IMG/VR virus record: IMGVR_UViG_3300020122_000238
Coordinates: 62,001-126,000 of that record
DNA: 64,000 bases
Direction: 5' to 3' (one strand)
Shown here: positions 1,071 through 20,382 of the stretch, piece after piece
Numbering within the stretch: the stretch's first letter is position 1
How the letters are laid out: each line of letters starts with the position of its first letter
The notes under the pieces: generated by a model
Seen by the model: the letters and a program-made list of their open reading frames with translations, nothing else
Databases searched by the model: none
What the model was told of the DNA's origin: nothing
Made by a program: the position numbers and the translations under genes

Positions 1071-1787
1071 ATGCGTCAAGGAGATCCGGAGCTACCTGAG
1101 CGAGAAGAGAGCGAACATGCGGAGGGGATCTTTGCAATGTGGCACGACCCCACGATGTATGATCCCTTCCAACACGGGCCTCCCTATCTTCCTGAGTCAA
1201 AGTCTCGAACGCCTGTGACCGCGGGGCAGAAGGAGGCGGATGCTCCGCTCATCATTCTGTCCCAGATCCTCCAGAAATTCGCAGCCGATTACGGGGGTGC
1301 GCCTCTTTCGGAGCTGGCGGCGATTCTCGCGTTCCTTCGAGCAGAGGCCATGGTTCACCAGTCTCACCACTGGCAGACCCGAGGGACGACGTTCTATGGG
1401 GATCATCTCCTCTACGACCGGCTTTATGACGACATCCAGAAGCTCATCGATCGCGTGGCAGAGCGGGCCGTTGGAGCTGGGCATCACGTTCTCGCCCACC
1501 CCATGTTGCATGCCTACCATGCGGCGGTTCTCGTTCGAGTCATGTATGAGGGGGCTCCCCTCGACCCTTCTCCGAGCGACTACGCTCTCCTCAGCTTGAG
1601 GATGGTGCATCGGTTTCTCGCTTTTGAGAAGATGGTCTACGCCATCCTCGAAGAACGCGGCCAGCTTTCCCACGGGACCGACAATCTCCTCCAGGAGATC
1701 GCCGACAAGCACGAGGAGCACATCTACGTTCTGAAACAACGAACCCGAACAGCGTCGTACGACCGTCGGGATATGGCAGTCAAATGA
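1071..1787 (+). CDS. Dps/ferritin-like four-helix-bundle protein
   Basis: HQSHHWQTRGTTFYGDHLLYDRLY and GTDNLLQEIADKHEEHIY match the Dps ferroxidase pattern HW..G..F...H....LY. Confidence 0.75.
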   Translation: MRQGDPELPEREESEHAEGIFAMWHDPTMYDPFQHGPPYLPESKSRTPVTAGQKEADAPLIILSQILQKFAADYGGAPLSELAAILAFLRAEAMVHQSHHWQTRGTTFYGDHLLYDRLYDDIQKLIDRVAERAVGAGHHVLAHPMLHAYHAAVLVRVMYEGAPLDPSPSDYALLSLRMVHRFLAFEKMVYAILEERGQLSHGTDNLLQEIADKHEEHIYVLKQRTRTASYDRRDMAVK

Positions 1788-2821
1788 GAAAGAAGGATCA
1801 GATGGGACAGGATCGCACGGGATACAAGCCGGGGGTTGGGCTCGACATCGGCACGATGAACATCGTCAGCGCCCGTATGGCTGGCAACGACATCAAGACC
1901 AAGAGGATGCGGGACGCCTTCATCGACCTCGACTTGGAGGCCAAGAAGCAGCTCCGGCTCTCGAAGGTCAACTACGTCGAGAAGGACGGCAACCTGCTCG
2001 TTCTCGGGGACTCGGCCATGGTCATGGCAAACCTCTTCAAGAGGGAAGTTCGCCGGCCTCTCAGCCGCGGGGTGATTTCCTCGGGGGAGCTGGACGCTCA
2101 GCAGATCCTCAGCCTGCTCATCTACCATGTCCTGGAAGACCCCACGATTCCTGATGAGCACTGCTACTACTCGGTGCCGGCGTCTCCGATCGATGACCAG
2201 GAGCAGGACGTCGTCTATCACACGGAGATCTTCCGGAAGATCGTCGCGGAACACGGCTACACGCCGCACCCGATGAACGAGGCCATGGCCATCATCTACA
2301 GCCAGTGTGCTGCCGAGGGCTTCTCGGGGCTCTCTGTTTCGTTCGGCTCGGGTATGTGCAACATCGCCCTCGCTTACCAGACGGTGATGGGGATGGACTT
2401 CGCGCTCGCTCGGGGTGGTGACTGGATCGACAGTCACGCTGCAAAGGCCACGGGCTCGACGGCTTCTCGCATGTGTTCGATCAAGGAGCGAGGGATCGAC
2501 ATCTCGAAGCCGAAGGGCCGTGAGGAAGAGGCACTCGCCCTCTACATCCGTACTCTCATTCGCTACTGCCTGGAGAACATCGCAGTGCAGTTCCGTCGGG
2601 TTCAGAACACGCTCAGCCTTCAGGAGCCGATTCCCTTCGTGGTCTCGGGAGGCACGAGCCGAGCGGGGGGCTTCCTCGACATCTTCCGTGAGGAGTTCGA
2701 GAACGTCAAGAAGAAGGGCTTCCCGATCCAGATCAGCGAGATCCGGTCCGCTGTCGATCCCATGACCGCGGTGGCAGAGGGTCTTTTGGTTCTGGCGATG
2801 GAAGAGCACAACGACCAGTAG
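1784..2821 (+). CDS. Actin-like ATPase (MreB/MamK/FtsA superfamily)
   Basis: Phosphate-1 GLDIGTMNI, connect NEAMA, phosphate-2 SFGSGMCNI, RGGDWID, adenosine VSGGTS, C-terminal TAVAEG. Confidence 0.8.
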   Translation: MRKKDQMGQDRTGYKPGVGLDIGTMNIVSARMAGNDIKTKRMRDAFIDLDLEAKKQLRLSKVNYVEKDGNLLVLGDSAMVMANLFKREVRRPLSRGVISSGELDAQQILSLLIYHVLEDPTIPDEHCYYSVPASPIDDQEQDVVYHTEIFRKIVAEHGYTPHPMNEAMAIIYSQCAAEGFSGLSVSFGSGMCNIALAYQTVMGMDFALARGGDWIDSHAAKATGSTASRMCSIKERGIDISKPKGREEEALALYIRTLIRYCLENIAVQFRRVQNTLSLQEPIPFVVSGGTSRAGGFLDIFREEFENVKKKGFPIQISEIRSAVDPMTAVAEGLLVLAMEEHNDQ

Positions 2822-2827
2822 GTTCCC

Positions 2828-3082
2828 ATGGTCTGCATACGTTGTGGCATTGAGCACGGAAGCCATGAAGAGAGAGAAAAACTCTTCGTGGCTTCCAGAG
2901 CTGAGAGTCTGGAGAACGACGAAATTCATTCTCTTCTTGCCAGGGGGAAAGATGATGGACGCCGAAGCTCGATCGCCCACAACTTGAGGTTGACTCGGGT
3001 GATCATGTGTTGGACCTCGGAGGTCCAACACATGATCACCCCAACAGCATGGGATGTGCTCTTGGGGGACGAGGCGATCTGA
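2828..3082 (+). CDS. Small hypothetical protein with C-terminal TAWDVLLGDE motif
   Basis: 84-aa ORF filling the gap between flanking genes; N-terminal CxxC. Confidence 0.55.
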   Translation: MVCIRCGIEHGSHEEREKLFVASRAESLENDEIHSLLARGKDDGRRSSIAHNLRLTRVIMCWTSEVQHMITPTAWDVLLGDEAI

Positions 3083-3083
3083 T

Positions 3084-4253
3084 ATGTACTACTACTTGGT
3101 CTCTTCTCTCAAGCGTCGGCTCATTGAGGAGTTGAAAGACTCTTTCAAAGACCATCCCATTTACGAGAAGGTTGTCCCGTACATTCAAAATAAATACGGT
3201 TTCCCGGAGAGGCCCCAATACGGGATCGTCGTCAAGGGGTCGAGCGCCAACAAGGTCCAGCTTTCCGGCGACAACTACATGGGGGTCATCGAGGGCCACG
3301 CGATGTTGGCGTACGCTGGGAACAAGCCGGCGTACCCTCTTGAATGGATCCGAGAAGACCAAAACGCGGTGCGGGCGAGTGGGGATCATTTTCCCACACA
3401 GCCAGGCATCTACTACATGGAGATCTTGGCGGTTCCCACCAATGCGACCACGCCGGGCCTATTCATCATCGACCCCTTGGTGACGGTGTCGGATGAGCCC
3501 GTGCTCATGTTCCGTTCGGGCATCGAGCATGAGGCGCAACTTCAGGGAGTCCCCGTCCGAGGGACGCTGAGGTTGTGGGAGAACGGGCGTGTCCTCTTCG
3601 AGGAGGGCACGGACTACACGATCAACTGGATGACGGGTGCCCTCAACATCCTGACTCGCTCAGGCCCGGGATCCACCCTCGTGGCGGACTACAGGGTTGC
3701 AGCTCCTTCCTCGGAGCCCACCCAGTTCTCCTGGAACGTCTCGGACTCGAAGACCATCCCGGGGGTCGTGCTCGCGTTCGGCAAGCGGGCGAAGGTGGGG
3801 GACAAGGTCGCAATCGTCATCTACAAGGATCGCGTGGACACGGCGAACGCCTACGGGGGCAAGTTCGAGGTGACTTTCGAACTTGATGTCATTGCCCGCG
3901 ACCCAAACCAGATGGAGGAGATGGCGGACCTCGTTATCATGTACCTCTGGGGGCACAAGAAGCCTGCTTTGGAGTTCGAGGGCATCGAGATCATCGACAT
4001 CTCGATGGGAGGGGAGACCGAGGAGATATACGATGAGACGACGGAGGAGCCCTACTTTAACGCCTCCATCTCGATCCAGCTTCGAGCTGATTGGGAGATC
4101 CATCTTCCTCTGCCGTTGACCATCAGCAAGGCCACGGCAGAGAACCCCACGACCAAGGAATCGGATATCGTAGGGGGTCTCAATAACTCCCTATTTTTTG
4201 CCACGGCTCCTGTTCTTCCAGGTCGTAATAGTAACTACGAAAAGATTGGATAA
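3084..4253 (+). CDS. Putative tail terminator / head-tail completion protein
   Basis: Start reassigned to ATG 3084 (MYYYLVSSLKRRL); position just upstream of sheath; C-terminal FEVTFELDVIARDPNQMEEMADLV resembles tail-completion proteins. Confidence 0.55.
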   Translation: MYYYLVSSLKRRLIEELKDSFKDHPIYEKVVPYIQNKYGFPERPQYGIVVKGSSANKVQLSGDNYMGVIEGHAMLAYAGNKPAYPLEWIREDQNAVRASGDHFPTQPGIYYMEILAVPTNATTPGLFIIDPLVTVSDEPVLMFRSGIEHEAQLQGVPVRGTLRLWENGRVLFEEGTDYTINWMTGALNILTRSGPGSTLVADYRVAAPSSEPTQFSWNVSDSKTIPGVVLAFGKRAKVGDKVAIVIYKDRVDTANAYGGKFEVTFELDVIARDPNQMEEMADLVIMYLWGHKKPALEFEGIEIIDISMGGETEEIYDETTEEPYFNASISIQLRADWEIHLPLPLTISKATAENPTTKESDIVGGLNNSLFFATAPVLPGRNSNYEKIG

Positions 4254-4257
4254 ATCA

Positions 4258-4698
4258 GTGCCCAAGTACGCTTTTCAATGCACTTGTAATCTTCGTTTCG
4301 AGCGGACCTTGCCGATGAACAACTATATCGTTCATCCTTGCCCTTCTTGTGGGGATTTGGCTCCACGTTATCTTGAGGGAGAGGGGTTCTCGTTCGGCTT
4401 CACGGGGACCTCTGTGGGAGCCACGGCCAACACAGGGGTCCACAAGGAGGACTACCCCACGGCGGATCATGCCGTGGGGAAAGACGCCGAGTCTCGTTGG
4501 GGGGTGGTCCAAGCTCGGGAGAAGGTGAAGGAAGGGGCTCGGGAACAGGGAGGGACATACCCCCTGATTCGACACACGACCAGGGGGCACATCGACTACG
4601 AGCCCATGAGCGATGGGGGTCGAGTGGCTCGTCGGAACTTGACGAAGAAGGCCATCGATACGTTCCGAGCTGCCGCTGAATCGAAGCGTTCGCGCTAG
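4258..4698 (+). CDS. FmdB-like zinc-ribbon protein
   Basis: GTG start; MPKYAFQCTCNLRFE...CPSCG matches MP.Y.Y.C..C...FE...CP.CG. Confidence 0.7.
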   Translation: MPKYAFQCTCNLRFERTLPMNNYIVHPCPSCGDLAPRYLEGEGFSFGFTGTSVGATANTGVHKEDYPTADHAVGKDAESRWGVVQAREKVKEGAREQGGTYPLIRHTTRGHIDYEPMSDGGRVARRNLTKKAIDTFRAAAESKRSR

Positions 4699-4713
4699 TC
4701 CTCTTATCTCGGC
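4693..4713 (+). promoter_or_regulatory. Putative late promoter (CGCTAGTCCTCTTATCTCGGC) upstream of tail sheath
   Basis: 21-bp exact copy at 23867-23887; related motifs precede other late-type genes. Confidence 0.55.
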
Positions 4714-4714
4714 G

Positions 4715-4860
4715 CGAAAGGTGACACTCTGGCGAGCGTCACCTTTCGTCGGAGCCCTCCTCGGGCAGATTAAAATCCGAATCAAATCAGAATCTGGTGG
4801 TTCGTTCCACCCATCCCCAAAAATATAAATCGGATTCTACGTCCCTTTGAGGAGACTCTA
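4715..4860 (+). promoter_or_regulatory. Structured 5' leader of tail sheath gene
   Basis: 11-bp stem 4715-4725/4738-4748, further stems 4754-4766, 4766-4771/4791-4796, 4796-4811; SD GAGGAG 4849-4854. Confidence 0.5.
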
Positions 4861-7800
4861 ATGGCCACTGGACCGTTCCAAACGTTCACCCCCACGCCGG
4901 AAATGAACCCCGGCGTCTACACCCAGACGTTCGCAGACGCGAACGTGACCAACATCCTGGGTGGCTTGCGGATTCCCGCGATCATCGGGGTGGGTCAAGA
5001 AGAACTGGTGCAAGACGACCTGGAAATGGTCCGTGGGAGCAGCGCTTCCATCGATCAGCAGATCGTCAGTGAGGACCCTAGCCTGGCATGGGTCGTCGAT
5101 GCGACGAACCCCCAGAACCTCATCCTCGGGGCGCAGGATGGGACCCGGACTCAGTTCCGCGTCCGAAACTTCCCCATCGTCGATGGCAGCGGCCTCGGTC
5201 GGGTCTCGAACGCCACCAAGGACATCTCCTCGATCACGGTCAACGGGTTGCCGGTCGCCCTCGGGGCAGTCCAGGGTGCCAAGGGCCTCATCACGCTTCA
5301 GATTCCGCCTCAACCGACGGACGTCGTTCGAGTGACCTACTTCTTCCACCGGGGAGATACGGCATTCACGGATGATGTCTCGGATCAGGTGACGAACCTG
5401 GACGCCATTTTGATGTCCCCTGGCTACGAGCCCTTCCTCGTCACGACCGGCTCGAATGACACCTTCGTCGTCAAGGTCGGTGGAACGTCGTACACGGTCA
5501 CGCTCACCGCGGGCTCCCTCACGGCGTCCAACGTCAAGAGCCAGATCGATGCCTCGGTCATCCCCAACCTCCAGACAGCGGTGTCGACGGACAACCAAGG
5601 GCTCAAGCACATTGCGCTCACCTCGACGGTCTCGCTGGAGATCGGGGCTGGTTCGGCCAATGGTCCCCTCGGCTTCTTGGCGAACACGAAGACGGCGAGG
5701 AACACGAGCTTCCGTGTCTTCCAGCGCCCCATTGTCGATGGGACGAGCGGCGGCATCACCACGACGGACCCCTCCAAGGTGGTCGTCAAGGTCAACGGTG
5801 CTCAGGTCATCCCGACGTCTGTAGATGGGACCAACGGTGTCGTGATGCTCGCCACTCCGCCCGCTCGCGGAGCTGTGGTCACGGTCCAATACTGGGCCAA
5901 CACCTGGCAGGACACGTTCGACTACCTTCCCAACACATTCGTCACCACGGTTGCCCGTTGTGGTATCTCGAACGGCCGTTCGGATTTCATTCAGGGGCAG
6001 GACTTCATTGTCTCGAATCCTTCGGCGGATGTCTCGATCATACACTGGGGGACGAGCTTCGTGGTCGCTTCCACGAAGACTTCCCCCGGGTCCACGCCGT
6101 TCAACGATTCGCAAATCGTCGGGTCGCTCGTCGATGAGAAGCTCTACCTCGCGACTTGCGCGAGGGTGACCGATACGGCGGTTATCCCGGCGAAGGTCTC
6201 GACGACGGACTTCCGTCTCCCCGAGATCCCCACCACAGGTAACGGTCGCTCGACACCTCTGGGCAACTCGCTCTACGCCTCGATCACCAACAACCGCCAG
6301 GACCTCATCACGAATCGCCCGGATCTGATCCAGGTCTACGTGGGCCGGACTCTCCGGGATGCCTTGGGTCGAGCGGCCGTGAAGGTTCTCACGGTGGACG
6401 GTGCCTCGCGTCTGCTTCGTCTTCGGGATGCAGTTCCCCCGGACTGGAACGCCTTCGCAACGTTCAACTACAACCGGATCGTGGACGACACTTACATCCT
6501 CACCTGCACGGTTCCTGGAGCCGTCGGGATGGGGCAGTACGAAGTCTTCTCGGTTCAGCAGAACGCGAACCTCTACCAGGTCCGCTTCGGCTCGAAGTCG
6601 GCTCTCAGCGAAACGGTTCAGTGGCCCCGTGGGGTCGAGACGGTCCCGGATGCGTTCCACTCGGGGACGGGGACTCCGGTTGTCGAGACGGTCACGGTGA
6701 CCTTTGGGTCCGCTGCGGCAACGAACGCGGCTTACACGAACAACCTTGCGGAGCCCTACTCCTTCTACGACCCCTCCTCGTCCACTTGGTCGATGGACCT
6801 CAACGGGAACACCCTGACGACGGATCTCTCGGGGGCTGCACAGGCCATCATGGTCTCGGGTCCGGTCACGCCGATTCAGACGGGCGGCAACGTGGGGACG
6901 ATCCTCATCCCTGTTTCTCCTGGGAACGTCCTCAACTTCGAGGTGGACGGGGTTCCTATCAGTGCGGCCCTCACCACTGGTTACATGAATCCGAATCAGA
7001 TCTTGTCGGACATCAACTCCGCCATTGATGCTGATGCTGCATTCTCCGGCACGGCTCCTAACTTCATGGTGAGCTATGTTCAGGTTGGGGGTGTTTCAAC
7101 GGGTGACATCTTCTTCGTCATCCAGAGCCCCACGGTGCCCGGTGCTCTCCCTGGCGGTTTTGACGACGTCTCCTCCGTGTTGATCACGCAGGGAACGGTG
7201 GAAGCCGTTCTTGGTTTCACGGCGTTCAAGTCTGCGCAAGGGACGACGGGAGCCATCAACAAGCCCGCAACGCTCCTCGGGTCTCTTGTCGGTCCGTTCA
7301 ACATCACCGCTGGCGTGAACGACTCGTTCAAGTTCCGCGTCAATGGGGCGCAGTACATGGTGACGCTCCCCGCGGGAGCGACGGTGGCGACATCCGCGAT
7401 CGTCACGGCAATCGATGCTGTGATTTCGGGCGTGGCTTCGGCGGGGACGGTGGGTAACTTCGACCAGCTCCGCCTCACTTCTCTGACGAACGACCCGCAG
7501 TCGTCTGTTCTCATCCTCGATGGGACGGCCAACGCGGCCCTCGGGTTCGCGCAGAATGCTCAGGGTTCTCAGACCCTCGTGTTGGCTCAGGAAGTCGTGG
7601 ACGCGCTTCTTGCCACCTCGGGCTTCCTCACCGATGGTGTCGCCTACGTCGACACCATCAACGGCTCGAACTACATCACCTTCGAGTCGCTGACGACCGG
7701 AGCGGCAACGAGCAGCATCGTCTTCAACACGGTGGCCAACTCCGCTTTCAACGCGACGACGGGCATTGGGCTCACGCCGGGTGTGGGTGGAGACAACGGG

Positions 7801-9153
7801 GAGGACGCGCAGGACAACTTCGAGGTCACCTCGAACAATGCTTCTGGTTCGGCTGGTTTGGGCATCCCCGGCCAGACGTACACGGACGCACAGACGGGGC
7901 TTCGCTTCACGGTCCTGCCCGCAACGACGGGTGGGTACGATGGGGCTGGGGCTTTCACGCTCCTTGTCACCTCGACGTTCGCGGTTGACCCCTCACGCCC
8001 CTTCCTGGCAATCGCTGGGTTGGAGCTGGGAGTCGCCAACACGGTCGGCGTTGCGGTGAACGACACGGCCACGGTTCAGACGTTCAACCCGGGTGGTGTT
8101 GAACCGAAGGTGGGTGACTTCTACTACATCACCTACAACTTCCTCAAGCGGGACTTCTCGACCCGCATCTTCCGCACGATCAAGACGATCGAGCAGAACT
8201 TCGGGCTGGTGTCGGCGGAGAACCGGGTGAGCCTCGCGGCCTACCTCGCGATCACCAACGGGGCTCTTCTCGTCGGGATCAAGCAGGTCATGAAGGCGGC
8301 GAACACCGCTCAGGCAACGGACGTCTCCTTCCTCGACGCGATCGACGAGCTGAAGACGCCTCTGCCTGGCAACGTCAAGCCCGACATCCTTGTGCCTCTG
8401 GCGACCTCGACGGCGGTCTACTCGCGGCTCACCCAGCATGTCGAGACCCAGTCGCACATCCGCAACCAGGCGGAGCGTATGGGCTTCTGTGGCTTTGCCT
8501 CTGGAACGAGCCCGACCAACGCGCAGACCATTGCCCGGAGCCTGAACTCGAATCGGATGGCCATGTTCTACCCGGACTCGGCCGTCATCACGCTCTCGGA
8601 TGCTCTGGGGCAGACGTTCGATTCCCTCGTGGACGGGACGTTCTTCGCAGCGGCCGTCGCTGGAGCCGTCGTGTCCCCCTCGGTCGATGTGGCGACGCCC
8701 TGGACTCGGCGTCGCATCGTCAACTTCACGCGCATCCCGCGCATCATGGATCCCGTCGAGGCCAACCAGACGGCCGCCGCAGGGATCACGCTCTTGGAGG
8801 ACCTCCAGCCGCTTGTTCGCATCCGGCAGGGGCTCACCACCAACATGTCGTCTCCGCTGACGCGCCTCCCGACGGTCACTCAGATCGCCGACTACGTGCA
8901 ACAGCAGTCCCGCATCGTCCTCGATTCCTTTGTCGGTTCCAAGTTCCTCGCTAGCCGGACCAACGAGGTCAACGTCTCGATGACGGGGCTCTTCAAGCAG
9001 CTCGTCCAGGCGGAGATCGTGGGCGCCTTCTCGGGCATCGCATCGGCCATCGATCCGAACGACCCCACGATTTTGAGGTTCCAAGCCTTTTATCAACCCG
9101 TTTTCCCCCTACTTTTTTTGGTTCTCACATTTAACCTTCGCGCTCGGATATAG
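4861..9153 (+). CDS. Contractile tail sheath protein (1430 aa, with inserted beta-rich domains)
   Basis: N-terminal PGVYTQT; C-terminal sheath core ERMGFCG...AAAVAG...IRQGLTT...QIADYV...YQPVFPLLFLVLTF. Confidence 0.88.
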   Translation: MATGPFQTFTPTPEMNPGVYTQTFADANVTNILGGLRIPAIIGVGQEELVQDDLEMVRGSSASIDQQIVSEDPSLAWVVDATNPQNLILGAQDGTRTQFRVRNFPIVDGSGLGRVSNATKDISSITVNGLPVALGAVQGAKGLITLQIPPQPTDVVRVTYFFHRGDTAFTDDVSDQVTNLDAILMSPGYEPFLVTTGSNDTFVVKVGGTSYTVTLTAGSLTASNVKSQIDASVIPNLQTAVSTDNQGLKHIALTSTVSLEIGAGSANGPLGFLANTKTARNTSFRVFQRPIVDGTSGGITTTDPSKVVVKVNGAQVIPTSVDGTNGVVMLATPPARGAVVTVQYWANTWQDTFDYLPNTFVTTVARCGISNGRSDFIQGQDFIVSNPSADVSIIHWGTSFVVASTKTSPGSTPFNDSQIVGSLVDEKLYLATCARVTDTAVIPAKVSTTDFRLPEIPTTGNGRSTPLGNSLYASITNNRQDLITNRPDLIQVYVGRTLRDALGRAAVKVLTVDGASRLLRLRDAVPPDWNAFATFNYNRIVDDTYILTCTVPGAVGMGQYEVFSVQQNANLYQVRFGSKSALSETVQWPRGVETVPDAFHSGTGTPVVETVTVTFGSAAATNAAYTNNLAEPYSFYDPSSSTWSMDLNGNTLTTDLSGAAQAIMVSGPVTPIQTGGNVGTILIPVSPGNVLNFEVDGVPISAALTTGYMNPNQILSDINSAIDADAAFSGTAPNFMVSYVQVGGVSTGDIFFVIQSPTVPGALPGGFDDVSSVLITQGTVEAVLGFTAFKSAQGTTGAINKPATLLGSLVGPFNITAGVNDSFKFRVNGAQYMVTLPAGATVATSAIVTAIDAVISGVASAGTVGNFDQLRLTSLTNDPQSSVLILDGTANAALGFAQNAQGSQTLVLAQEVVDALLATSGFLTDGVAYVDTINGSNYITFESLTTGAATSSIVFNTVANSAFNATTGIGLTPGVGGDNGEDAQDNFEVTSNNASGSAGLGIPGQTYTDAQTGLRFTVLPATTGGYDGAGAFTLLVTSTFAVDPSRPFLAIAGLELGVANTVGVAVNDTATVQTFNPGGVEPKVGDFYYITYNFLKRDFSTRIFRTIKTIEQNFGLVSAENRVSLAAYLAITNGALLVGIKQVMKAANTAQATDVSFLDAIDELKTPLPGNVKPDILVPLATSTAVYSRLTQHVETQSHIRNQAERMGFCGFASGTSPTNAQTIARSLNSNRMAMFYPDSAVITLSDALGQTFDSLVDGTFFAAAVAGAVVSPSVDVATPWTRRRIVNFTRIPRIMDPVEANQTAAAGITLLEDLQPLVRIRQGLTTNMSSPLTRLPTVTQIADYVQQQSRIVLDSFVGSKFLASRTNEVNVSMTGLFKQLVQAEIVGAFSGIASAIDPNDPTILRFQAFYQPVFPLLFLVLTFNLRARI

Positions 9154-9222: not shown

Positions 9223-10956
9223 ATGCCGAAGAAGCCGAACGCCCCCCGCCCTGAAGAGACCTATTCTCTCTTCACCACTCAAGAACCCTTCAAAGCCACT
9301 TCGAAGCGTCTCGGTATCTCGCCGAACACGCTTCGTGGTTGGTGGATCGAGCACTTCGGGCAGGAAGCCTTTGAAGCTCGGGGAAAGCTTATTCAGGCGA
9401 AGGGGGCAGCTCTTTCAAATGAGAGCCGGGTGGGCAAAGCTCATCAAATCCGAGAAGTGGTTGTCCCCTGCTCTTCTTGTGGGGGCGATGTCACGGTCAA
9501 CCTTCTTCAGAAGGCCCGAAGCAAGACCATCGTGTGTGTCCCCTGTGAGGAGTCGTCACGAGGGGTCGACCAGCATTGCCCTGTCTGCGGGGTGGGCTGT
9601 GTTGGGGAGAAGGGGCTTGCTTCCCACATGGTCCGCCCGGAGAAGGGTGACGTGGCTGCTCATGCGCAGCACCTCTCGGCGCAAGAGGCGGCTCTGTGGG
9701 AGGGCAAGGAAGAGGGGCGAGACTTCGTGGTCTGTCGGCTCTGTGGGGTGAAGGAGACGACGCTGGGGCGGCATCTCAAGGCTGCCCATGGGGTCACGGC
9801 GGAACAGTACCGGATGCAGTTCCCTGGAATACGAATCGTCTCCGAGGGCATCACACAGAAGCGGTCGCAGAGCGTGACGAAGGCTCATCGGGATTACCCC
9901 CGGAAGACTTTCACGAGAATCGTTCGGAAGGCTCCTCGTGAAAAAGGTCCTCCCATGGCTCGGGAGGTCCGGGTCTCTTCTCTCAAGGGCCGGACCCTCT
10001 CTCCTGAAACTAGGGCGAAGATGTCCGCCAATGCCGGTCGATGGGCCAAGGGCCTCACCAAGGAAACTGATCCTCGGCTGGCAGCCATGGCAGAAAAAAG
10101 GATGGGGCAACCCTCCTGGTCGAAGGGGTTGACCAAGGCCAATCACCCGAGCCTTCAGCAGGCATCCGAGAAGCAGTCCGCCATTCGATTGGGGGTTCCG
10201 AATGATGCTGCCAGGCTCGACCTCAGCCCAGAGGTTTTTCTCCCCTACCTGGATGAGACAGGTGCGATCGACCGTCGGATGATGGCGGAGGAGCTGGATA
10301 TCTGCGAGCCGACCCTTACGAAGTACATGGAGCTGCATGGGCTCCGGCTGTCGACGAAGTACATGGCTGCGCGGATAGCCCGGGATACGGAGGCTGGCCG
10401 GTTCCATGAGATGAGCCGCAAGAGTGCGGAGTTGACGACCATTCGGCTCACCATTGAGCAGCTTGAGCCCTACAAGCTCAAGAACGGGAAGGTCTTCCTG
10501 GCTCGTGCAATGAGGGGGTTGGGGCACGTCTACCAGGTCATCAAGCGAGAGTGCGATCGTCACGGGATCCCCACGCACACGCATCTGGTGAAGCAAGCTC
10601 TCTGTCTTGAAGCCGTCGCGAAGGTTCTTGGGGGTGCTTCATACCATCAAGAATGGCGCTTCCGTAAATTCACGAATCCGGTGACAAACCACATGTTTCG
10701 GTTCGACGGGTACTTCCCCGATTTGAAACTCTTGGCGGAGTTTCAGGGCTACCATCACTACACGTTCCCCAACGTCTTCCACAAGGACGAGGCTGCCTAT
10801 GATGCCAGCGTGGAGCGGGACCGTCAGAAAGCTCTTCAGGTTCGAGCCTCGGGGGAGTTTAAGTTCCTCGTTGTCCGAGAAGACGAGCCGTACGCCGACG
10901 AAGGCTATCTTCGGGGCCGGCTCATCGACGAGGGTGTTCTGTCCCCTGGCAAGTGA
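9223..10956 (+). CDS. Putative free-standing homing endonuclease (Zn fingers, NUMOD3-like and WxKGLTK repeats, C-terminal Vsr/PD-(D/E)XK-like nuclease)
   Basis: CxxC/C2H2 motifs, KGRTLSPETRAKMS, WAKGLTKETD/WSKGLTKANH, FRFDGYFPDLKLLAEFQGYHHY. Confidence 0.75.
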   Translation: MPKKPNAPRPEETYSLFTTQEPFKATSKRLGISPNTLRGWWIEHFGQEAFEARGKLIQAKGAALSNESRVGKAHQIREVVVPCSSCGGDVTVNLLQKARSKTIVCVPCEESSRGVDQHCPVCGVGCVGEKGLASHMVRPEKGDVAAHAQHLSAQEAALWEGKEEGRDFVVCRLCGVKETTLGRHLKAAHGVTAEQYRMQFPGIRIVSEGITQKRSQSVTKAHRDYPRKTFTRIVRKAPREKGPPMAREVRVSSLKGRTLSPETRAKMSANAGRWAKGLTKETDPRLAAMAEKRMGQPSWSKGLTKANHPSLQQASEKQSAIRLGVPNDAARLDLSPEVFLPYLDETGAIDRRMMAEELDICEPTLTKYMELHGLRLSTKYMAARIARDTEAGRFHEMSRKSAELTTIRLTIEQLEPYKLKNGKVFLARAMRGLGHVYQVIKRECDRHGIPTHTHLVKQALCLEAVAKVLGGASYHQEWRFRKFTNPVTNHMFRFDGYFPDLKLLAEFQGYHHYTFPNVFHKDEAAYDASVERDRQKALQVRASGEFKFLVVREDEPYADEGYLRGRLIDEGVLSPGK

Positions 10957-12730: not shown

Positions 12731-12760
12731 TCGATTTCTATCTATTGTGGTTGCACGTAT

Positions 12761-13300
12761 ATGCGTCATTACGAATACGACCGTCGAGTTGCTTCCACAT
12801 ACCTGTACGATCGGACGGCATCGAGTGTCCGTGAGGTCTATCAAGAGACTTCTGGACAGAGGAACTTCTTCGTGGACGGGAAGAAGGTTGGCAACCCCAA
12901 AGATCCTATTGCCAATTGGAAAATCTCTACAAAAGCAAGCAAAGTTCCTGGGGGCGCCAAGTTTATGGCGTTGTGGCCGGAGTCTTCGGGAGCTGCGCAA
13001 GCTCTCTTGAAGAGTCGTGATTGCTCGTTGATTCTTCTGTCCGATAATGCCTTCAAGCATTACGGGTTTAATGGGTGGGTGCAATTTAAAGAAGTGGCGG
13101 GGTCATGGACTGCCAGGTACTACATGGCACGATCCAAAGAGAAGGAATTGCAGGGGTTTGAAGCAGCCTTTCTTCAGAGCCCTGGCGATGATGACGTCGT
13201 CAAGTTCAATAGGGATTGCCCTGAGCCCTATATTGTTATCTTGGACCCTTCTTGGGTGTCCAGTATCGCCTCCAGCCTCAATGCGAAGGCGTGGTACTGA
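12761..13300 (+). CDS. Hypothetical protein with N-terminal YDRRVA/YDRTA motifs
   Basis: ATG 12761 after GATTTCTATCTATT motif; AT-richer body. Confidence 0.65.
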   Translation: MRHYEYDRRVASTYLYDRTASSVREVYQETSGQRNFFVDGKKVGNPKDPIANWKISTKASKVPGGAKFMALWPESSGAAQALLKSRDCSLILLSDNAFKHYGFNGWVQFKEVAGSWTARYYMARSKEKELQGFEAAFLQSPGDDDVVKFNRDCPEPYIVILDPSWVSSIASSLNAKAWY

Positions 13301-14514: not shown

Positions 14515-14540
14515 CGTCGAGATCTGGTGTACTAAATATT

Positions 14541-15003: not shown

Positions 15004-15035
15004 TGTGTGATTTTGATCATGGTGTAATAACCCCC

Positions 15036-15647
15036 ATGGCGAACTACAGCTACATCGATCTCCTTGGCGAGCTGACGGAAGAGGCCTTCGAGGCGGCCCT
15101 CACGGCTGCGGCTGCTCGGACGTTGAACCCGGACTGGAAAGTCGAGCGAGCATCCTTCGAGGATGGGGGTCCCGTCTGGATGGTTACTCTCCCGGGCACG
15201 GCTCCGGAGCCCACGGAAGAGACTCGCAAGCTCCCTTTCTTCTGCCAGGATGAGGATGTGGGGTTCATGGTAGCGCTCCAGCCCAGCCGGGTGGCCTTCC
15301 GCCATGGACCGATCACCCCGTTTGAACGGTGGGCGCAGGGTCGCATCGAGGAAGAGCTGGCAGACTTCTTCAACGTCGGCGTGTTCTACGATGCGACCGA
15401 CAGGATTGCTCCGCCGGGGACTCGGGAATACCGAACGGGGACGACATACGAGGACTATGTGTTCCGTAAGTGGACGCCGACCCCTGCCGAGCTGGAGTCA
15501 GTGAAACACGACTTCGAGAGATGGATCCCCAAAGGACAATCCAGGGAGGATCGTGTTCGCAAGTTCCAGAAAATGGTCCAGGGGTTGCCTGATGTCCCCG
15601 TTGTGGACATTTTCGAGAGGCCTGGTGTAAGGGAAGACCATGACTGA
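15036..15647 (+). CDS. Hypothetical protein
   Basis: ATG 15036 lies 9 nt after TGGTGTA. Confidence 0.7.
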   Translation: MANYSYIDLLGELTEEAFEAALTAAAARTLNPDWKVERASFEDGGPVWMVTLPGTAPEPTEETRKLPFFCQDEDVGFMVALQPSRVAFRHGPITPFERWAQGRIEEELADFFNVGVFYDATDRIAPPGTREYRTGTTYEDYVFRKWTPTPAELESVKHDFERWIPKGQSREDRVRKFQKMVQGLPDVPVVDIFERPGVREDHD

Positions 15648-15996: not shown

Positions 15997-16001
15997 TAAG
16001 G

Positions 16002-16844: not shown

Positions 16845-16872
16845 TGTAGTTTCTATCCCCTGAGCAGGATGT

Positions 16873-19800
16873 ATGCACGACACCCAGATGATCTACGACC
16901 GTCGTCAGGCCGCCGATGAAGAGGTTGTCGAGGTCGACAAGACGTTCGGCGAACTCCAGATCGCCGAATACGTGGTCTTCCTTTTCGCCCTCGATACCTA
17001 CATGAGATACATGGAGGAGGTTGGGCTCCCCCATGACGAGATGACGGCCAACGGGCTGAAGCTGCTCCGAATGGCGGACATGCTTCACGGCGAGGTCATT
17101 GCTGGCTACATGAAGGCCAACCTCCCGTCGGACACCCACAAGAAGATGCTGGAGAAGGCTCTCCGGCTGAGGCCAACCCCTGATGGGGCTGCTCGCCGGG
17201 CTCTCCAGATCCGCACCCTGCTCTCTCGGGGTGGTGCCTCGACAATGCGAGCGGTGTTCAGCACGAACAAGGCCCTCCAAGAGGTTCGAGCGGCCATCGC
17301 GGCATCCATGGTGGACGATGCTGATGCCGCTCTTGACAAGTTCGCGGTCATCCCCGTCAAGAACATCCGGATTCGTAACTGGATCGACGAAGCTGCCAAA
17401 TTGGCAGGGTCGGGAGTTCCTCCGACACCGGTGACTGCGGTGAGCCAATCTGGCGGTCGAGTCGACGCGTCCAGGGAGCTGACCGTCGAGCGCATGAAGG
17501 CGGAAGCTGCCGACCCAGCTTCTGAGGAGACGAAGGGCACCTCGGACCGTCAAGACAAGATCATCTCTCGGGTCCAAGAAGAAGCTCAGGCGACGGCCTT
17601 GAAGTCCCTGGACGCCAAAAACGAGCCCGATGCCCCTGTCACGAAGTCTCAGGTTGTTGGCATCGCGGCTGCAACTGTAGCAGCCGCGATGGCGGACCCC
17701 GAAGACCTGAAGAACGTCCCGGAGCCCCTCCGTACTCTCGACCCGGAGCAACGGGGAGCGGCTCTCACGGACGGCAAGGTTCTCATTGCTGCGGGAGCCG
17801 GTGCTGGGAAGTCGACGACCCTTGTCGCTCGAATTCAGTACCTCATCAAGGATCGTGGGGTCAAGCCCGGCCGCATCCTGGCTTGTTCGTTCAACCGTAA
17901 GGCGGCGAACGAGCTGAGGGACAAAATCGCCAAGAAGTGTGGCGAGAACGAGATGAAGCAGATGTCCGTGGGGACGATGCACTCGCTCTTCATGCGCTTC
18001 ATCGTGGGTGATCGGGGATCCAACATCCCGGCCTTCGGCACCCCCGCAGAACAGAAGCTTTTCTCCGAGGAGCGACTCATCGCCAACCCTGAGCCGGGTC
18101 AGAAATTCAAGAAGGGCCCGAAGCCCATCAACCACACACTGGCGATTCAGGGCGTAATAAAGGAATGCGGACCGATCGCGCTCGCTTCCTACTACAAGGT
18201 CGATCCGAAGACGTTGGAGGACGGTAGTTCCAGCGCTAAGAAGGCGAACCTCCATATCAATGTGTGGAAGGGCAACGATGTCTCCCCCGAGCAAGCGCTT
18301 GCCAATGCAAAATCAAAAGCAGAAATCTTTGCTGCGATTTGGTATCATATCGGATCGGGGCTCAAGGGAGACATTCCGGGCTGGCGTCCGCCGTGCTCTC
18401 AGAGCAAGACCGCCGACAAGTGGATGGACACATTCCGTCCCGGCAAGGAGCGACTCGGGGACCTTGACGACATGGTCAAGGTCTACCGGGACATCCTCGT
18501 GCGTGACCCCAAGGCCCGCGCCTTGGTTCAGAACATGTTCGATCACATCCTCGTGGACGAGTGCCAGGACCTCAACACGGTTCAGCACCAAGTCTTCGAT
18601 CTGATGTCTCAGCACATCACGGACGGCAAGGACGGCAAGTCCCTCTGGATGGTCGGTGACGACAAGCAGGCCATCTACCAGTTCCGCGGGGCTCGCCCGG
18701 ACCTTTTCACGGCCCTCAACGGCAAGGAGGGCTGGAAGACTCGGATGATCAAGACGAACTACCGCTGCGCTCCGGAGATCGTCGAGTGCGCCAACAAGCT
18801 CGTCGCCCACAACACGAACCAGATCCCGATGGAGGCTCGTGCGAACCCGAAGAAGGCTCGCAAGGAAGCTTCGATCGAGGTCACGGTGCCGGGGGACAAC
18901 GCTTCTGGGGCCATCTATACCCTTCAGCGGATCACGAAGGAGCTTCGTGCGAATCCGACGAGCGAGGAGAAGGACTACGCTGTTCTCGCTCGTACGAACA
19001 ACGAGCTGAATGACTATGAGACGGCCTGCATCATCGAGGGCATCCCGTACACCCGCGTGGGTGGTTCGAGCTTCCTGGAAGCCCCTGAGTCCAAGGCCGT
19101 GCTCGGCTACCTCGACCTCGCGGGCGGGACCAACTTCGAGAAGATGCAGCTCTCGTTGGCTTCGAGCCTGACGAAGCCGGATCGCGGTCTCTACCTCTCG
19201 ACTGACAAGGTGGCCGAGATCGTCAAGGAGGCTCTCCAGGACATCGCTCGCGGGGACGGGATGGACGTGAAGTCTCTCAACCCCTTTGAGGTGATCACCA
19301 AGAGGGTCTACGCCCGCCAGCTCGCCGAAGCCCTCAAGCAGCCCTACAAGAACAAGCTGATGGCCACGGGGGATTGGCTCTGGCGGAAGTCTGTCGATGA
19401 GATGACAGAGACCCTTCTCGAAATGGGGACTCAGGTCGCGAAGCTCAAGAAGACGATCAACGACACGTCGATGCCCGTCGAGGATGTCTTCAAAATCATC
19501 CTCGACGACGTCAAGGCAACGACGGGCTACCGCAACAACCGGACGGGGGAGGACACCCGGAAGACCGTTACTCTTCGAGAGCAGATCTCGAACGACATGT
19601 CCCTCTACTCGGATGGGAGTGAGGACGCCGAGGAAGAGGAAGAGCCGGACTCCGTCAAGCCTGTCGTTGATGACGAGGGCAACCTCATGCTCCCCAAGAC
19701 GGAGGGAGAGCCTGGAGTTCCTTCGGCACCTCCCGCTCCGGAGAACCCTGCCAAAGGGCTTGGAGCTGTGCAGTTCCTCTACCAGATCGCACAGCCGAAT

Positions 19801-20382
19801 GCGCAGGACCACGACTTGGGGCATGACCCGACGACGGCTCTGGGCTTCATTAAGAAGCTGGAGCGCTACTCGGATGCCTCGAAGACGCTTCGAGTCGACC
19901 TCAAGAAGTGGGCCCTGGATCAGAAGAAGCTCCCGCCGGAGCAGCGGGAAGAGCGTCCGCGGTGCATGGTACTTTCCACGGTCCATTCGGTCAAGGGAGC
20001 CGAGTGGCCAAATGTGTTCGTATGTATGCCGGCGGGTATCTTCCCGGTCGAGAAGAAGCCCAAGAAGGATGAGCCCCCGCCCGACCCAGAAGAGGAGCTG
20101 AGGAAGCTCGAAGCGGAGCGGAACCTCGCCTACGTCGCTCTTACCCGGGCCGCAAAGAACCTCACCGTGGTCTGTGCCAAAGCTCCTTCACGGTTCGTCT
20201 TCGAGGCAGGCCTCAAGCCGGGGGAGAACGTCGAGAAGGACGTTCCTCTGGTTACAGAAGAGGGTACTCCGAAAACGGCTGAGGAGGACTTCGGAGACCA
20301 CGGGCCCCCGCCCTTCGAGGACATGGCTTCTTACTTCATGACAGCCGGCGGGGTTGACTCCTCGTACGATCGGAGGGCGTGA
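16873..20382 (+). CDS. UvrD/PcrA-family SF1A DNA helicase with ~270-aa N-terminal extension
   Basis: Motifs LDPEQ, AGAGAGKST, FNRKAANEL, VDECQD, VGDDKQAIYQFRGA, NYRC, LARTN, STVHSVKGAEW, AYVALTRA. Confidence 0.93.
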   Translation: MHDTQMIYDRRQAADEEVVEVDKTFGELQIAEYVVFLFALDTYMRYMEEVGLPHDEMTANGLKLLRMADMLHGEVIAGYMKANLPSDTHKKMLEKALRLRPTPDGAARRALQIRTLLSRGGASTMRAVFSTNKALQEVRAAIAASMVDDADAALDKFAVIPVKNIRIRNWIDEAAKLAGSGVPPTPVTAVSQSGGRVDASRELTVERMKAEAADPASEETKGTSDRQDKIISRVQEEAQATALKSLDAKNEPDAPVTKSQVVGIAAATVAAAMADPEDLKNVPEPLRTLDPEQRGAALTDGKVLIAAGAGAGKSTTLVARIQYLIKDRGVKPGRILACSFNRKAANELRDKIAKKCGENEMKQMSVGTMHSLFMRFIVGDRGSNIPAFGTPAEQKLFSEERLIANPEPGQKFKKGPKPINHTLAIQGVIKECGPIALASYYKVDPKTLEDGSSSAKKANLHINVWKGNDVSPEQALANAKSKAEIFAAIWYHIGSGLKGDIPGWRPPCSQSKTADKWMDTFRPGKERLGDLDDMVKVYRDILVRDPKARALVQNMFDHILVDECQDLNTVQHQVFDLMSQHITDGKDGKSLWMVGDDKQAIYQFRGARPDLFTALNGKEGWKTRMIKTNYRCAPEIVECANKLVAHNTNQIPMEARANPKKARKEASIEVTVPGDNASGAIYTLQRITKELRANPTSEEKDYAVLARTNNELNDYETACIIEGIPYTRVGGSSFLEAPESKAVLGYLDLAGGTNFEKMQLSLASSLTKPDRGLYLSTDKVAEIVKEALQDIARGDGMDVKSLNPFEVITKRVYARQLAEALKQPYKNKLMATGDWLWRKSVDEMTETLLEMGTQVAKLKKTINDTSMPVEDVFKIILDDVKATTGYRNNRTGEDTRKTVTLREQISNDMSLYSDGSEDAEEEEEPDSVKPVVDDEGNLMLPKTEGEPGVPSAPPAPENPAKGLGAVQFLYQIAQPNAQDHDLGHDPTTALGFIKKLERYSDASKTLRVDLKKWALDQKKLPPEQREERPRCMVLSTVHSVKGAEWPNVFVCMPAGIFPVEKKPKKDEPPPDPEEELRKLEAERNLAYVALTRAAKNLTVVCAKAPSRFVFEAGLKPGENVEKDVPLVTEEGTPKTAEEDFGDHGPPPFEDMASYFMTAGGVDSSYDRRA

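What the first reader, a model, noticed from the sequence alone, without database searches (positions are those of the whole stretch)
1740..20382. Shared terminal peptide tag YDRR-(x)-A on unrelated proteins: candidate capsid-packaging or maturation signal
Seen: YDRR or YDRT occurs at protein termini. Dps-like C-terminus RTASYDRRDMAVK (1758-1769). 12761 protein N-terminus YEYDRRVAS.YLYDRTAS (12776-12817). UvrD at BOTH ends: MIYDRRQAA (16894-16905) and SSYDRRA* (20365-20376). Codons differ synonymously (GAC CGT CG. vs GAT CGG AGG), pointing to protein-level selection. The 12761 and UvrD genes directly follow the late-type promoter motif rather than TGGTGTA. Known: T4 internal proteins carry a capsid-targeting sequence removed by the prohead protease. 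Inference: a helicase and a Dps-like protein are tagged for loading into the head and ejection into the host.
Basis: partly seen in the sequence, partly recalled or inferred. Interest (0 to 1): 0.75.

Follow-up and report, generated by a model that had tools for sequence, protein, structure and literature searches.

The report
Portable terminal address tags in huge phages
A four-residue peptide (Tyr-Asp-Arg-Arg and lineage-specific variants) sits on floppy ends of unrelated proteins in this 275-kb phage and its uncultivated relatives, and most likely works as an address label that docks them on one shared partner, perhaps for loading into the virus particle.

Summary
All five YDRR in the called proteome of this 275,300-bp phage lie within 10 residues of a protein end. 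The sixth case (YDRT) is residue 16 of the 12761 protein. No shuffle (0 of 100) gave a word as terminal. A fifth tagged end lies outside the window.

Homologues at 34-97% identity support selection on the peptide. The UvrD-like helicase keeps Y[DE]R[RTSK] at the C-end in 37 of 120 and at the N-end in 17 of 120. The Dps-like protein keeps it at the C-end in 45 of 120. Flanking linkers do not align, codons vary, and AlphaFold2 models both helicase tails as disordered.

Related genomes have their own flavours: RF[DE]R on about 70 mostly unrelated small proteins in one, PTAW[ED]R[LI] in another, YDY/SRFD in a third. The tail-terminator homologue ends in an invariant N[FY]ERI.

Best reading (confidence about 0.4) is a portable docking peptide for a shared phage-encoded receptor, probably for virion loading, as with the T4 capsid-targeting sequence or P1 DarB. 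No virion data exist. The one docking prediction, against the capsid protein, gave no answer. Removal by the prohead protease is not supported. Rivals are a non-virion hub, a degron and tail or neck docking.

The parts
1137..1787 (+). Dps/ferritin-like protein (216 aa from this start; 238 aa if started at 1071)
   Evidence: Pfam Ferritin 25.4 bits against cut-off 24.5 and DUF5856. PHROG 3636 at 1.5e-11. 165 homologues found.
1758..1769 (+). YDRR tag, 5 residues from the C-terminus of the Dps-like protein
   Evidence: 45 of 120 homologues carry Y[DE]R[RTSK] in the last 24 residues, against 2 internal copies. The tag is absent from the G001 and G003 orthologues, so it is gained and lost.
3084..4253 (+). 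Tail-terminator homologue (389 aa) with a disordered C-terminal tail (residues 346-389)
   Evidence: AF2 model with pLDDT about 85 for residues 1-345 and below 50 for the tail. Foldseek and VIA matches to the phage 812 neck, lambda gpU and T4 gp15, Z 8.6-14.1.
4233..4250 (+). C-terminal peptide NYEKIG of the terminator; the family consensus is G-R-N-N-[ND]-[FY]-E-R-I-x*
   Evidence: 118 of 120 homologues have [FY][DE][RK] in the last 8 residues. It resembles the RF[DE]RI* tags of G001. Whether it is the same signal as YDRR is inferred, not shown.
12761..13300 (+). 179-aa protein of unknown function with two tandem N-terminal tags
   Evidence: No Pfam, PHROG or PDB match. The Atlas lead to ADP-ribosyltransferases scores 0.82, below the reliable range.
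12776..12787 (+). YDRR tag 1 (residues 6-9)
12806..12817 (+). YDRT tag 2 (residues 16-19)
16873..20382 (+). UvrD/PcrA-like helicase (1169 aa) with a clade-specific helical N-terminal domain (about residues 24-280) and disordered tails at both ends
   Evidence: Pfam. AF2 gives pLDDT below 50 for residues 1-23 and 1125-1169. 280 homologues found.
16894..16905 (+). N-terminal YDRR tag of the helicase
   Evidence: 17 of 120 homologues have the strict motif in the first 22 residues, and more carry YDYRR, YNRR, YERR or YDFR.
20365..20376 (+). C-terminal YDRR tag of the helicase (one residue before the stop)
   Evidence: 37 of 120 homologues have the motif at the C-end, against 10 internal copies in 145,158 residues.
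50779..51912 (+). Baseplate protein (377 aa), directly upstream of the gp6-like wedge gene and possibly the sheath initiator; its N-terminus MSYDR[QK]I is the same in all five genomes checked
   Evidence: PHROG 975 'baseplate protein' at 1.6e-4. Wedge gene identified. N-termini. The Atlas lead to Sheath_initiator is weak. It may be a structural arm rather than a tag.
15036..15647 (+). 203-aa protein ending ..DIFERPGVREDHD*; a weak candidate
   Evidence: No orthologue in G001, G003 or G004 to test it.
12736..12742 (+). TTCTATC motif about 20 nt upstream of the 12761 start, with no Shine-Dalgarno sequence
16851..16857 (+). TTCTATC motif about 17 nt upstream of the helicase start, with no Shine-Dalgarno sequence
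1802..2821 (+). Context: actin-like protein (Pfam Volactin), flanked by the C-tagged Dps-like gene and the terminator gene
   Evidence: Pfam 8.5e-76. Synteny is conserved in G003, G004, G001 and L109.
4861..9153 (+). Context: 1430-aa protein read as the tail sheath (N-terminal arm ..PGVY[ST][RQ]T..), between the terminator and the helicase in all relatives
   Evidence: Only a faint DUF2460 match. The sheath assignment rests on sequence features and gene order; it is an inference.

Best explanation
YDRR is one flavour of a short linear motif with the core aromatic-acidic-Arg ([FYW]-[DE]-R-x). It is displayed at the very end of a flexible tail, at either terminus, sometimes at both or in tandem. 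It works as a portable address label: unrelated proteins that carry it dock, through that peptide, on one common phage-encoded receptor that co-evolves with it.

The most likely purpose is to load these proteins into or onto the assembling virion, so that they travel with the DNA into the next host. The analogues are the T4 capsid-targeting sequence on its diverse internal proteins and the N-terminal packaging signal of the P1 helicase-like DarB.

Shown here: the motif is terminal, sits on disordered tails, is selected at the protein level, is gained and lost on orthologues, is shared by non-homologous proteins, and differs in flavour between lineages. Inferred: that a single receptor exists, that it is a virion or assembly component, and that the tagged proteins are packaged and ejected.
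For: 1. Terminal restriction: 5 of 5 YDRR and 6 of 6 YDR[RT] are terminal, and 0 of 100 shuffles match this.

2. Conservation against unalignable flanks: helicase C-end 37 of 120, N-end 17 of 120, only 10 internal copies. Dps-like C-end 45 of 120, 2 internal.

3. Portability: G000 p238 and G001 p236 share MYSYDRR but nothing else. The Dps tag is present in G000 and G005 and absent in G001 and G003.

4. Disorder: helicase residues 1-23 and 1125-1169 have pLDDT below 50, and G001 linkers are 20% proline against 7% in controls.

5. Codons vary, including CGN against AGR for Arg.

6. Lineage flavours with large tagged sets:
- G001: RFDR 40 of 43 terminal. [FWY][DE]R is terminal 103 times against 33 expected (p=4e-29), on 101 proteins. 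Of the 69 RF[DE]R-tagged proteins, 58 have no BLAST relative among the others.
- G007: WERL 12 of 15 terminal, PTAW 8 of 8.
- G002: SRFD 8 of 8, plus N-terminal YDYDFR.

7. Helicase and Dps tails co-vary within a contig: GYDWRAE* with GYDFRGK*, and YSYRRSS* with YSYDRSNS*. This points to a common receptor.

8. Virion link: the tagged helicase and Dps genes sit in conserved synteny inside the tail gene block, in the order Dps, actin-like, terminator, Zn-ribbon, sheath, helicase. The tail terminator, a virion protein, ends in an invariant [FY]ERI on a 44-residue disordered tail.

9. [quoted passage not shown] The N-terminal 30 residues of P1 DarB suffice for encapsidation (PMC9024508).

10. The capsid protein is 90-93% identical between genomes whose median orthologue identity is 47-50%, with 94 synonymous codon changes. 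That is what a hub under many constraints would look like, but it is circumstantial.
Against: There is no proteomic or structural evidence that any tagged protein is in a virion, and the clade has no cultured member.

The docking prediction of the helicase C-tail on two capsid-protein copies scored 0.00, which the tool itself calls no evidence either way.

The head maturation protease and the Gln-rich scaffold-like protein carry no tag.

In G001 most tagged genes are small ORFans in arrays at both genome ends, on the strand opposite to the structural genes. That looks more like accessory or early genes than late virion genes, and about 100 cargo species is many.

The terminator tail is constant while the helicase and Dps tags vary by lineage, so the two may address different receptors.

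The equivalence of YDRR, RF[DE]R and W[ED]R[LI] rests on pattern resemblance and one hybrid (RYDREDVL*).
Confidence: 0.4

Rival explanations
1. The tag is a recruitment motif for a hub that is not part of the virion. It would gather proteins at a replication or repair factory, on the filament of the phage's actin-like protein, or in some phage-built compartment, as clamp-binding or PIP-like motifs or the ParR tail on ParM gather partners.
For: The two annotated carriers act on DNA: a UvrD-like helicase and a Dps-like protein. A GapR-like 90-aa protein ending GYDKK*/SYDKR* sits next to a gene I read as a sliding clamp, from its N-terminal sequence only. The actin-like gene is flanked by two C-tagged genes in conserved order. 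Terminal position at either end and tandem copies are typical of hub-binding motifs (general knowledge).
Against: About 100 mostly tiny ORFans in G001 are hard to place in a replisome. The motif is polar and charged, unlike known clamp motifs (general knowledge). The helicase and Dps genes lie in the tail block, not in the replication block at genome 10-23 kb. No partner was tested.
Confidence: 0.2
2. The tag is a degradation or chaperone handle: a terminal peptide read by an AAA+ protease, an adaptor or a chaperone (phage or host) to time the removal or folding of accessory proteins.
For: Known degrons are short, terminal, work at either end and sit on unstructured tails (general knowledge). 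The G001 tagged set looks like arrays of accessory or early genes. E. coli Dps is a classical ClpXP substrate (general knowledge).
Against: A helicase tagged at both ends, kept so across 34-97% identity, is odd for a degron. The same core ends a stable structural protein, the tail terminator, in 118 of 120 homologues. Lineage-specific flavours suggest a fast-evolving phage receptor rather than a conserved host protease. The motif matches no published ClpX class (general knowledge).
Confidence: 0.12
3. The tag mimics the terminal arm of a tail protein and docks by strand addition on the sheath or neck. Carriers would be tail- or neck-associated rather than inside the head.
For: The terminator homologue ends in invariant N[FY]ERI on a long floppy tail. 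G001 tags RF[DE]RI* and RFERVG* are close to its terminator's SFERIG*. In four of five relatives the sheath N-arm reads PGVYSRT; the window's own reads PGVYTQT. The baseplate protein next to the wedge gene starts MSYDR[QK]I. In P1 the N- and C-termini of the terminator join the sheath 'handshake' sheet (PMC10304247), and the helicase is tagged at both ends.
Against: Only six such sites per tail are free, and the terminator should fill them. The terminator tail does not co-vary with the tags. The resemblance covers three or four residues.
Confidence: 0.12
4. The motif is the cleavage site of the prohead protease, as the reader's T4 analogy implies.
For: A head maturation protease is encoded at genome 42031-43518. 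T4 removes its targeting sequence by cleavage (PMC3012670).
Against: C-terminal copies lie 0-5 residues from the stop, so cleavage would remove almost nothing. Residues after the motif are not conserved.
Confidence: 0.03
5. Chance, a gene-calling artefact, or a DNA- or RNA-level element (promoter, ribosome-binding site, recombination box) that happens to be translated.
For: Four of the six sites share TACGACCG. In the UvrD C-tag the codons CGG AGG overlap the Shine-Dalgarno sequence of the next gene. Some G001 tails (..GAG GTG..) also look like ribosome-binding sites.
Against: 0 of 100 shuffles match the terminal restriction. Stop codons fix the C-terminal cases. Arg is encoded by both CGN and AGR, and Phe, Asp and Glu codons vary. 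N-terminal copies cannot be downstream ribosome-binding sites. The motif recurs in orthologues with unrelated flanking DNA.
Confidence: 0.02

Closest known systems
T4 capsid-targeting sequence (CTS) of internal proteins IPI-III and Alt
   Same: A short terminal peptide is the only thing shared by a diverse, fast-evolving set of proteins, and it addresses them to one destination (PMC3012670).
   Different: The T4 CTS is N-terminal only, about 10 residues, ends in a gp21 cleavage site and is removed. Here the core is 3-4 residues, works at either end or both, shows no cleavage signature, and its destination is unknown.
P1 DarB N-terminal packaging signal (Dar anti-restriction system)
   Same: A very large protein is addressed to the virion by a terminal peptide, and the cargo protects or acts on the incoming DNA (PMC9024508). 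That DarB is helicase-like is my own knowledge.
   Different: The DarB signal is 10-30 residues, N-terminal, and has no consensus with the other Dar proteins. Here a clear consensus is shared by many proteins.
Encapsulin cargo-loading peptides
   Same: Short N- or C-terminal peptides after a flexible linker. Ferritin-like proteins are typical cargo. The receptor is an HK97-fold shell protein (general knowledge). This phage has a small (293 aa) HK97-type capsid protein and a tagged ferritin-like protein.
   Different: The known consensus, hydrophobic Gly-Ser-Leu type (from memory), is unlike [FY][DE]R. Binding to the capsid protein was not supported or refuted.
N-terminal cargo signals of extracellular contractile injection systems (PVC, Afp)
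   Same: Disordered terminal segments that load unrelated payloads into a phage-tail-like machine (general knowledge, not checked in the library).
   Different: Those signals are about 50 residues, N-terminal and without a sharp motif. Here the signal is a 4-residue motif at either end.
Terminal arms of the tail terminator and sheath in contractile tails (the 'handshake')
   Same: Terminal peptides of the terminator add to a sheet formed by sheath termini (PMC10304247). This clade's terminator ends in the same aromatic-acidic-Arg core.
   Different: Those are structural contacts of virion proteins, not portable tags on enzymes and ORFans.
Hub-binding short linear motifs (clamp-binding and PIP boxes, SSB tail, FtsZ C-terminal peptide)
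   Same: Short, terminal, on disordered tails, convergently acquired (general knowledge).
   Different: Different chemistry, and the known hubs are cellular. Here the flavour changes between phage lineages.

Membership tests
Short linear motif (SLiM) on a disordered tail | 3-10 residues lying in an intrinsically disordered region | tested here: met
   AF2 gives pLDDT below 50 for helicase residues 1-23 and 1125-1169 and for terminator residues 346-389. G001 linkers are Pro-rich.
Short linear motif (SLiM) on a disordered tail | Conserved in orthologues while the flanks are not; gained and lost; present on non-homologous proteins | tested here: met
T4-type capsid-targeting sequence | N-terminal position | tested here: not met
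   About half the copies are C-terminal.
T4-type capsid-targeting sequence | Ends in a prohead-protease site and is cleaved off | tested here: not met
   No conserved residues follow the motif, and C-terminal copies lie 0-5 residues from the stop. Actual cleavage is not testable here.
T4-type capsid-targeting sequence | Carrier proteins are found inside the head | not testable with these tools
   No isolate and no virion proteome. The closest named phages are distant.
Encapsulin-type cargo-loading peptide | Terminal peptide after a flexible linker; ferritin-like cargo | tested here: met
   The Dps/ferritin-like protein carries a linker and the tag.
Encapsulin-type cargo-loading peptide | Peptide binds the inner face of the HK97-fold shell protein | tested here: inconclusive
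   Complex prediction scored 0.00, 'no answer'.
Encapsulin-type cargo-loading peptide | Known consensus motif | tested here: not met
   [FYW][DE]R is unlike the published hydrophobic consensus. The comparison is from memory.
UvrD/PcrA superfamily 1 helicase (carrier protein) | UvrD-helicase and UvrD_C domains | tested here: met
   Pfam 1.8e-46 and 8.1e-30.
Dps/ferritin-like (carrier protein) | Ferritin-like four-helix domain | tested here: met
   Pfam Ferritin 25.4 bits against cut-off 24.5; PHROG 3636 at 1.5e-11. Ferroxidase residues and the dodecamer were not tested.
Tail terminator (lambda gpU / T4 gp15) | Terminator fold | tested here: met
   VIA Z 14.1 to the phage 812 neck, 10.0 to lambda gpU and 8.6 to T4 gp15.
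Tail terminator (lambda gpU / T4 gp15) | Terminal arm joins the sheath handshake sheet | not testable with these tools
Precedent in P1.
ClpX/Lon-type degron | Match to a known degron class and recognition by the protease | not testable with these tools
   No resemblance to the classes I recall. The host is unknown.

The most novel reading that the evidence does not exclude
Huge phages of this uncultivated clade run a peptide 'postcode' system. Lineage-specific 3-6-residue labels (YDRR, YDYDFR, RF[DE]R, TAW[ED]R[LI]) at either protein end address from a handful to about 100 different proteins, up to 17% of the called genes, to a co-evolving phage receptor. The receptor would load them into the virion or onto a phage-built structure. 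This would be a general, re-programmable cargo code with no described counterpart in phages, and would give a 4-residue handle for protein delivery.
Probability: 0.3. Interest if true: 0.85.

Novelty: new variant of a known kind. Interest (0 to 1): 0.7.

Why it matters
Huge phages encode hundreds of proteins of unknown role, and how they sort them is unknown. A short label read at either end would define, from sequence alone, a functional class of proteins in each genome: cargo, or clients of one hub. It would make the helicase and the Dps-like protein candidates for DNA-protecting or DNA-processing proteins that travel with the genome, as P1 Dar proteins and T4 internal proteins do. It would also expose a receptor-peptide pair that co-evolves between lineages. 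If it is a loading signal, four to six residues that work at either terminus would be a much smaller and more flexible handle than the T4 or P1 signals used to put foreign proteins into phage particles. The claim can be tested directly with one isolate or with viral-fraction metaproteomics.

Tried and rejected
1. DNA-level element: rejected on codon variation and on N-terminal copies.

2. Prohead-protease site: rejected on position.

3. Intramolecular docking of the helicase tails on its own N-terminal domain: AF2 leaves both tails disordered.

4. Docking on the capsid protein: complex prediction with two capsid copies plus helicase residues 1140-1169 gave 0.00, 'no answer'. This used the only job, so the actin-like protein, sheath, portal and clamp could not be tried.

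5. Function of the 12761 protein, p238 and G001 p236:
- No hit in Pfam, PHROGs or PDB sequences.
- Atlas leads to ADP-ribosyltransferases score 0.82, below the reliable range.
- Ten G001 tagged proteins gave no significant Pfam match; the one hit was far below its cut-off.

6. Close relatives among deposited phages: none by megablast. TerL points only to an uncultured 485-kb phage (48%) and to Tunturiibacter phage Tunturi_5 (28%), whose UvrD is an ordinary 686-aa protein.

7. RF[DE]R enrichment in G002, G005, G007, G008 and G009: not above the reversed-pattern control, so that flavour is specific to G001.

8. WK-type tags in G000, G001, G003 and G004: no terminal enrichment.

9. Co-variation of the terminator's F/Y with tag flavour: none seen.

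10. The internal TPYDRRK in the G003 sheath is part of a conserved folded segment, not a tag.

11. Literature search for YDRR or comparable phage tags found nothing.


Full report
**What the window is.** The window is bases 62001-126000 of a single-contig virus record of 275,300 bp, 58% G+C. Nearly all genes are on the + strand. It encodes the following recognisable parts.
- Large terminase at genome 29680-33072.
- Portal at 35529-37181, head maturation protease at 42031-43518, and a small HK97-type major capsid protein at 45652-46533.
- A gp6-like baseplate wedge protein.

It has no near relative among deposited phages. The terminase points to an uncultured 485-kb phage (48%) and, distantly, to Tunturiibacter phage Tunturi_5. 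IMG/VR holds related contigs of 230-450 kb. I use G000 for this genome. G001, G002 and G007 are complete relatives of 435, 448 and 437 kb, and G003 and G004 are partial ones.

- The Dps/ferritin-like protein ends RTASYDRRDMAVK*.
- The 12761 protein starts MRHYEYDRRVASTYLYDRTAS.
- The UvrD-like helicase starts MHDTQMIYDRRQAA and ends SSYDRRA*.

Six-frame translation of the whole genome yields only nine YDR[RT]. Six are in real genes and all six are terminal. One is new: MYSYDRRANVK at genome 263932. In an unbiased scan of 50,143 tetrapeptides, YDRR is the most terminal word (5 of 5, p=1.6e-5). None of 100 within-protein shuffles produced a best word that good. Codons differ between sites.

**It is selected at the protein level.**
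- Sixteen IMG/VR loci encode helicase orthologues at 34-97% identity. Most keep the motif at both ends: MMTYDRRP with SYDRRSAR*, MTYSRRH with YGYDRRPL*, and RYERP with YTYDRTRN*.
- Among 120 helicase homologues, Y[DE]R[RTSK] occurs 17 times in the first 22 residues and 37 times in the last 24. It occurs only 10 times in the remaining roughly 140,000 residues.
- Among 120 Dps-like homologues it occurs 45 times at the C-end and twice inside, always after the end of the ferritin-like domain (..KHEEHVYLLKQR) and a short linker.
- Orthologues gain and lose it. The Dps tag is absent in G001 and G003 and present in G005.
- G000 p238 and G001 p236 share MYSYDRR and nothing else.
- AlphaFold2 with a 50-sequence alignment folds the helicase well (mean pLDDT 81.7) but leaves residues 1-23 and 1125-1169 below 50.

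These are the marks of a short linear motif on flexible tails.

**The motif has flavours, and some genomes use it massively.**
- G001: the same scan gives RFDR (40 of 43 terminal, p=1e-33) and RFER (27 of 31). There are 69 proteins with a terminal RF[DE]R, mostly PxRF[DE]R[DE]E[VP][LI]* or RF[DE]RI*, with a few N-terminal (MATRFDRI). Of the 69, 58 have no BLAST relative among the others once the tag is removed. A hybrid, RYDREDVL*, links the two flavours.
- Counting the core [FWY][DE]R, terminal against expected: G000 17 against 7.6 (p=8e-4); G001 103 against 33 (p=4e-29, on 101 proteins); G007 50 against 23 (p=3e-8); G003 12 against 7.2; G002 not enriched.
- G007 uses PTAW[ED]R[LI] (WERL 12 of 15, PTAW 8 of 8) plus DYDR (7 of 8). 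G002 uses SRFD (8 of 8) and N-terminal YDYDFR or NYDYR.
- Other lineages put W.P.H.EEY* or ..WK..* on the same helicase and Dps proteins.
- Within a contig the helicase and Dps tails co-vary: GYDWRAE* with GYDFRGK*, and YSYRRSS* with YSYDRSNS*. This argues for one co-evolving receptor.

**Link to the virion.** The tagged Dps and helicase genes lie in a conserved block. The order is Dps-like, actin-like (Pfam Volactin), a 389-aa protein, a Zn-ribbon protein, a 1430-aa sheath-like protein, and the helicase. The 389-aa protein is a core gene with 574 homologues. Its AF2 model matches tail terminators: phage 812 neck Z 14.1, lambda gpU 10.0, T4 gp15 8.6. Its last 44 residues are disordered, and it ends in G-R-N-N-[ND]-[FY]-E-R-I-x* in 118 of 120 homologues. 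That is close to the G001 tags RFERI* and RFERVG*.

The baseplate protein upstream of the wedge gene starts MSYDR[QK]I in all five genomes checked. In four of five relatives the sheath N-arm reads PGVYSRT; the window's own reads PGVYTQT. In P1 the terminator's N- and C-termini join the sheath handshake sheet (PMC10304247). So structural proteins of the tail carry the same core on terminal arms. Whether accessory proteins copy these arms is an inference. The terminator tail does not co-vary with the other tags.

**Mechanism.** I commit to this: the peptide is a portable docking label for a shared, phage-encoded, co-evolving receptor, most likely used to load the carriers into or onto the virion (confidence 0.4). 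The precedent is close. T4 internal proteins are described as a highly diverse set sharing only the capsid-targeting sequence (PMC3012670). P1 packs the 250-kDa DarB through its N-terminal 30 residues (PMC9024508).

Against this reading:
- There are no virion data.
- The single docking run on the capsid protein gave no answer.
- The protease and the scaffold-like protein are untagged.
- Most G001 tagged genes sit in arrays at the genome ends, on the strand opposite to the structural genes.

Rivals are a non-virion hub, including the actin-like filament (0.2), a degron or chaperone handle (0.12), tail or neck docking by arm mimicry (0.12), a protease site (0.03), and chance or a DNA element (0.02).

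**Comparison and novelty.** It works like a capsid-targeting or cargo-loading peptide, but it fails the defining tests of the T4 CTS. It is not N-terminal only, and it has no cleavage signature. It has the form but not the consensus of encapsulin peptides. I file it as a new variant of a known kind: a very short, bidirectional, lineage-variable terminal tag in uncultivated huge phages, with its receptor and destination still to be found. Literature searches found no earlier description.

Noticed in passing
genome 45652-46533 (locus L089:5652-6530), outside the window: The 293-aa HK97-type major capsid protein is 90-93% identical between G000, G001 and G003. The median orthologue is 47-50% identical and the next best about 70%. 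There are 94 synonymous codon differences, so this reflects strong purifying selection rather than recent transfer.
   Followed up: partly
G001 (IMGVR_UViG_3300037313_001869), e.g. loci L047-L049 and L065-L068: About 100 proteins (17% of called genes) carry a terminal [FWY][DE]R tag. They lie mostly in + strand arrays at 0-50 kb and 350-435 kb, on the strand opposite to the structural genes. One carrier is a truncated capsid-protein paralogue (43287-43859, 36% identical to the capsid protein) ending PSRFDRVLEMAA*.
   Followed up: partly
window 1137-1250 and Dps-like homologues P0121-P0240: The Dps-like family has a second conserved N-terminal motif, W.DP..YD....GPPYLP. Many members also carry a further terminal motif, D.RWK[ST][GK]*, or an N-terminal RWK. 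The helicase family has WK-type and W.P.H.EEY* tails in other lineages.
   Followed up: partly
window 1802-2821: An actin-family protein (Pfam Volactin, 8.5e-76) is a conserved gene of this phage clade (62-76% identity). It sits between the Dps-like gene and the tail-terminator gene. Its role in a phage is unknown.
   Followed up: no
whole genome; e.g. genome 207393 and 260844: A bipartite promoter-like motif, GGTTGATC ... [TC]GGTGTA[AG], is enriched upstream of at least 20 + strand genes (GGTGTAA in 20 of 269 upstream regions, p=2e-16). A rarer (GTAG)TTTCTAT[CT] motif lies 16-29 nt before six starts that lack a Shine-Dalgarno sequence. Those six include the 12761 gene, the helicase and the gene after the portal.
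   Followed up: partly
window 16942-17712 (helicase residues about 24-280): The helicase has a clade-specific, confidently folded all-helical N-terminal domain (pLDDT about 90) with no Pfam match. Several homologues (for example P0003, P0018, P0113) carry inteins (PF14890, PF14528).
   Followed up: no
genome 29680-33072 (L088:9680-13069): The large terminase is 1130 aa. Its N-terminal third (residues 148-462) matches a PHROG helicase family, while G001's best-matching ORF, at 660 aa, aligns over only 583 residues at 57%. This looks like a fusion or an extra domain.
   Followed up: no
window 9223-10956: A 577-aa protein with a Ros/MucR zinc-finger domain (29.7 bits against cut-off 25.4) lies inside the tail gene block, between the sheath and the helicase.
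   Followed up: no
G001 2852-3562 (L047): The 236-aa protein that shares only MYSYDRR with G000 p238 contains an HEATH (HExxH-like) motif, so it may be a metallopeptidase. Pfam gives no match.
   Followed up: partly
genome 14557-16132 (L087): A 90-aa coiled-coil protein with a weak GapR-like match ends GYDKK* (SYDKR* in G001). It lies directly upstream of a 426-aa gene that I read as a sliding clamp, from its N-terminal sequence only.
   Followed up: no
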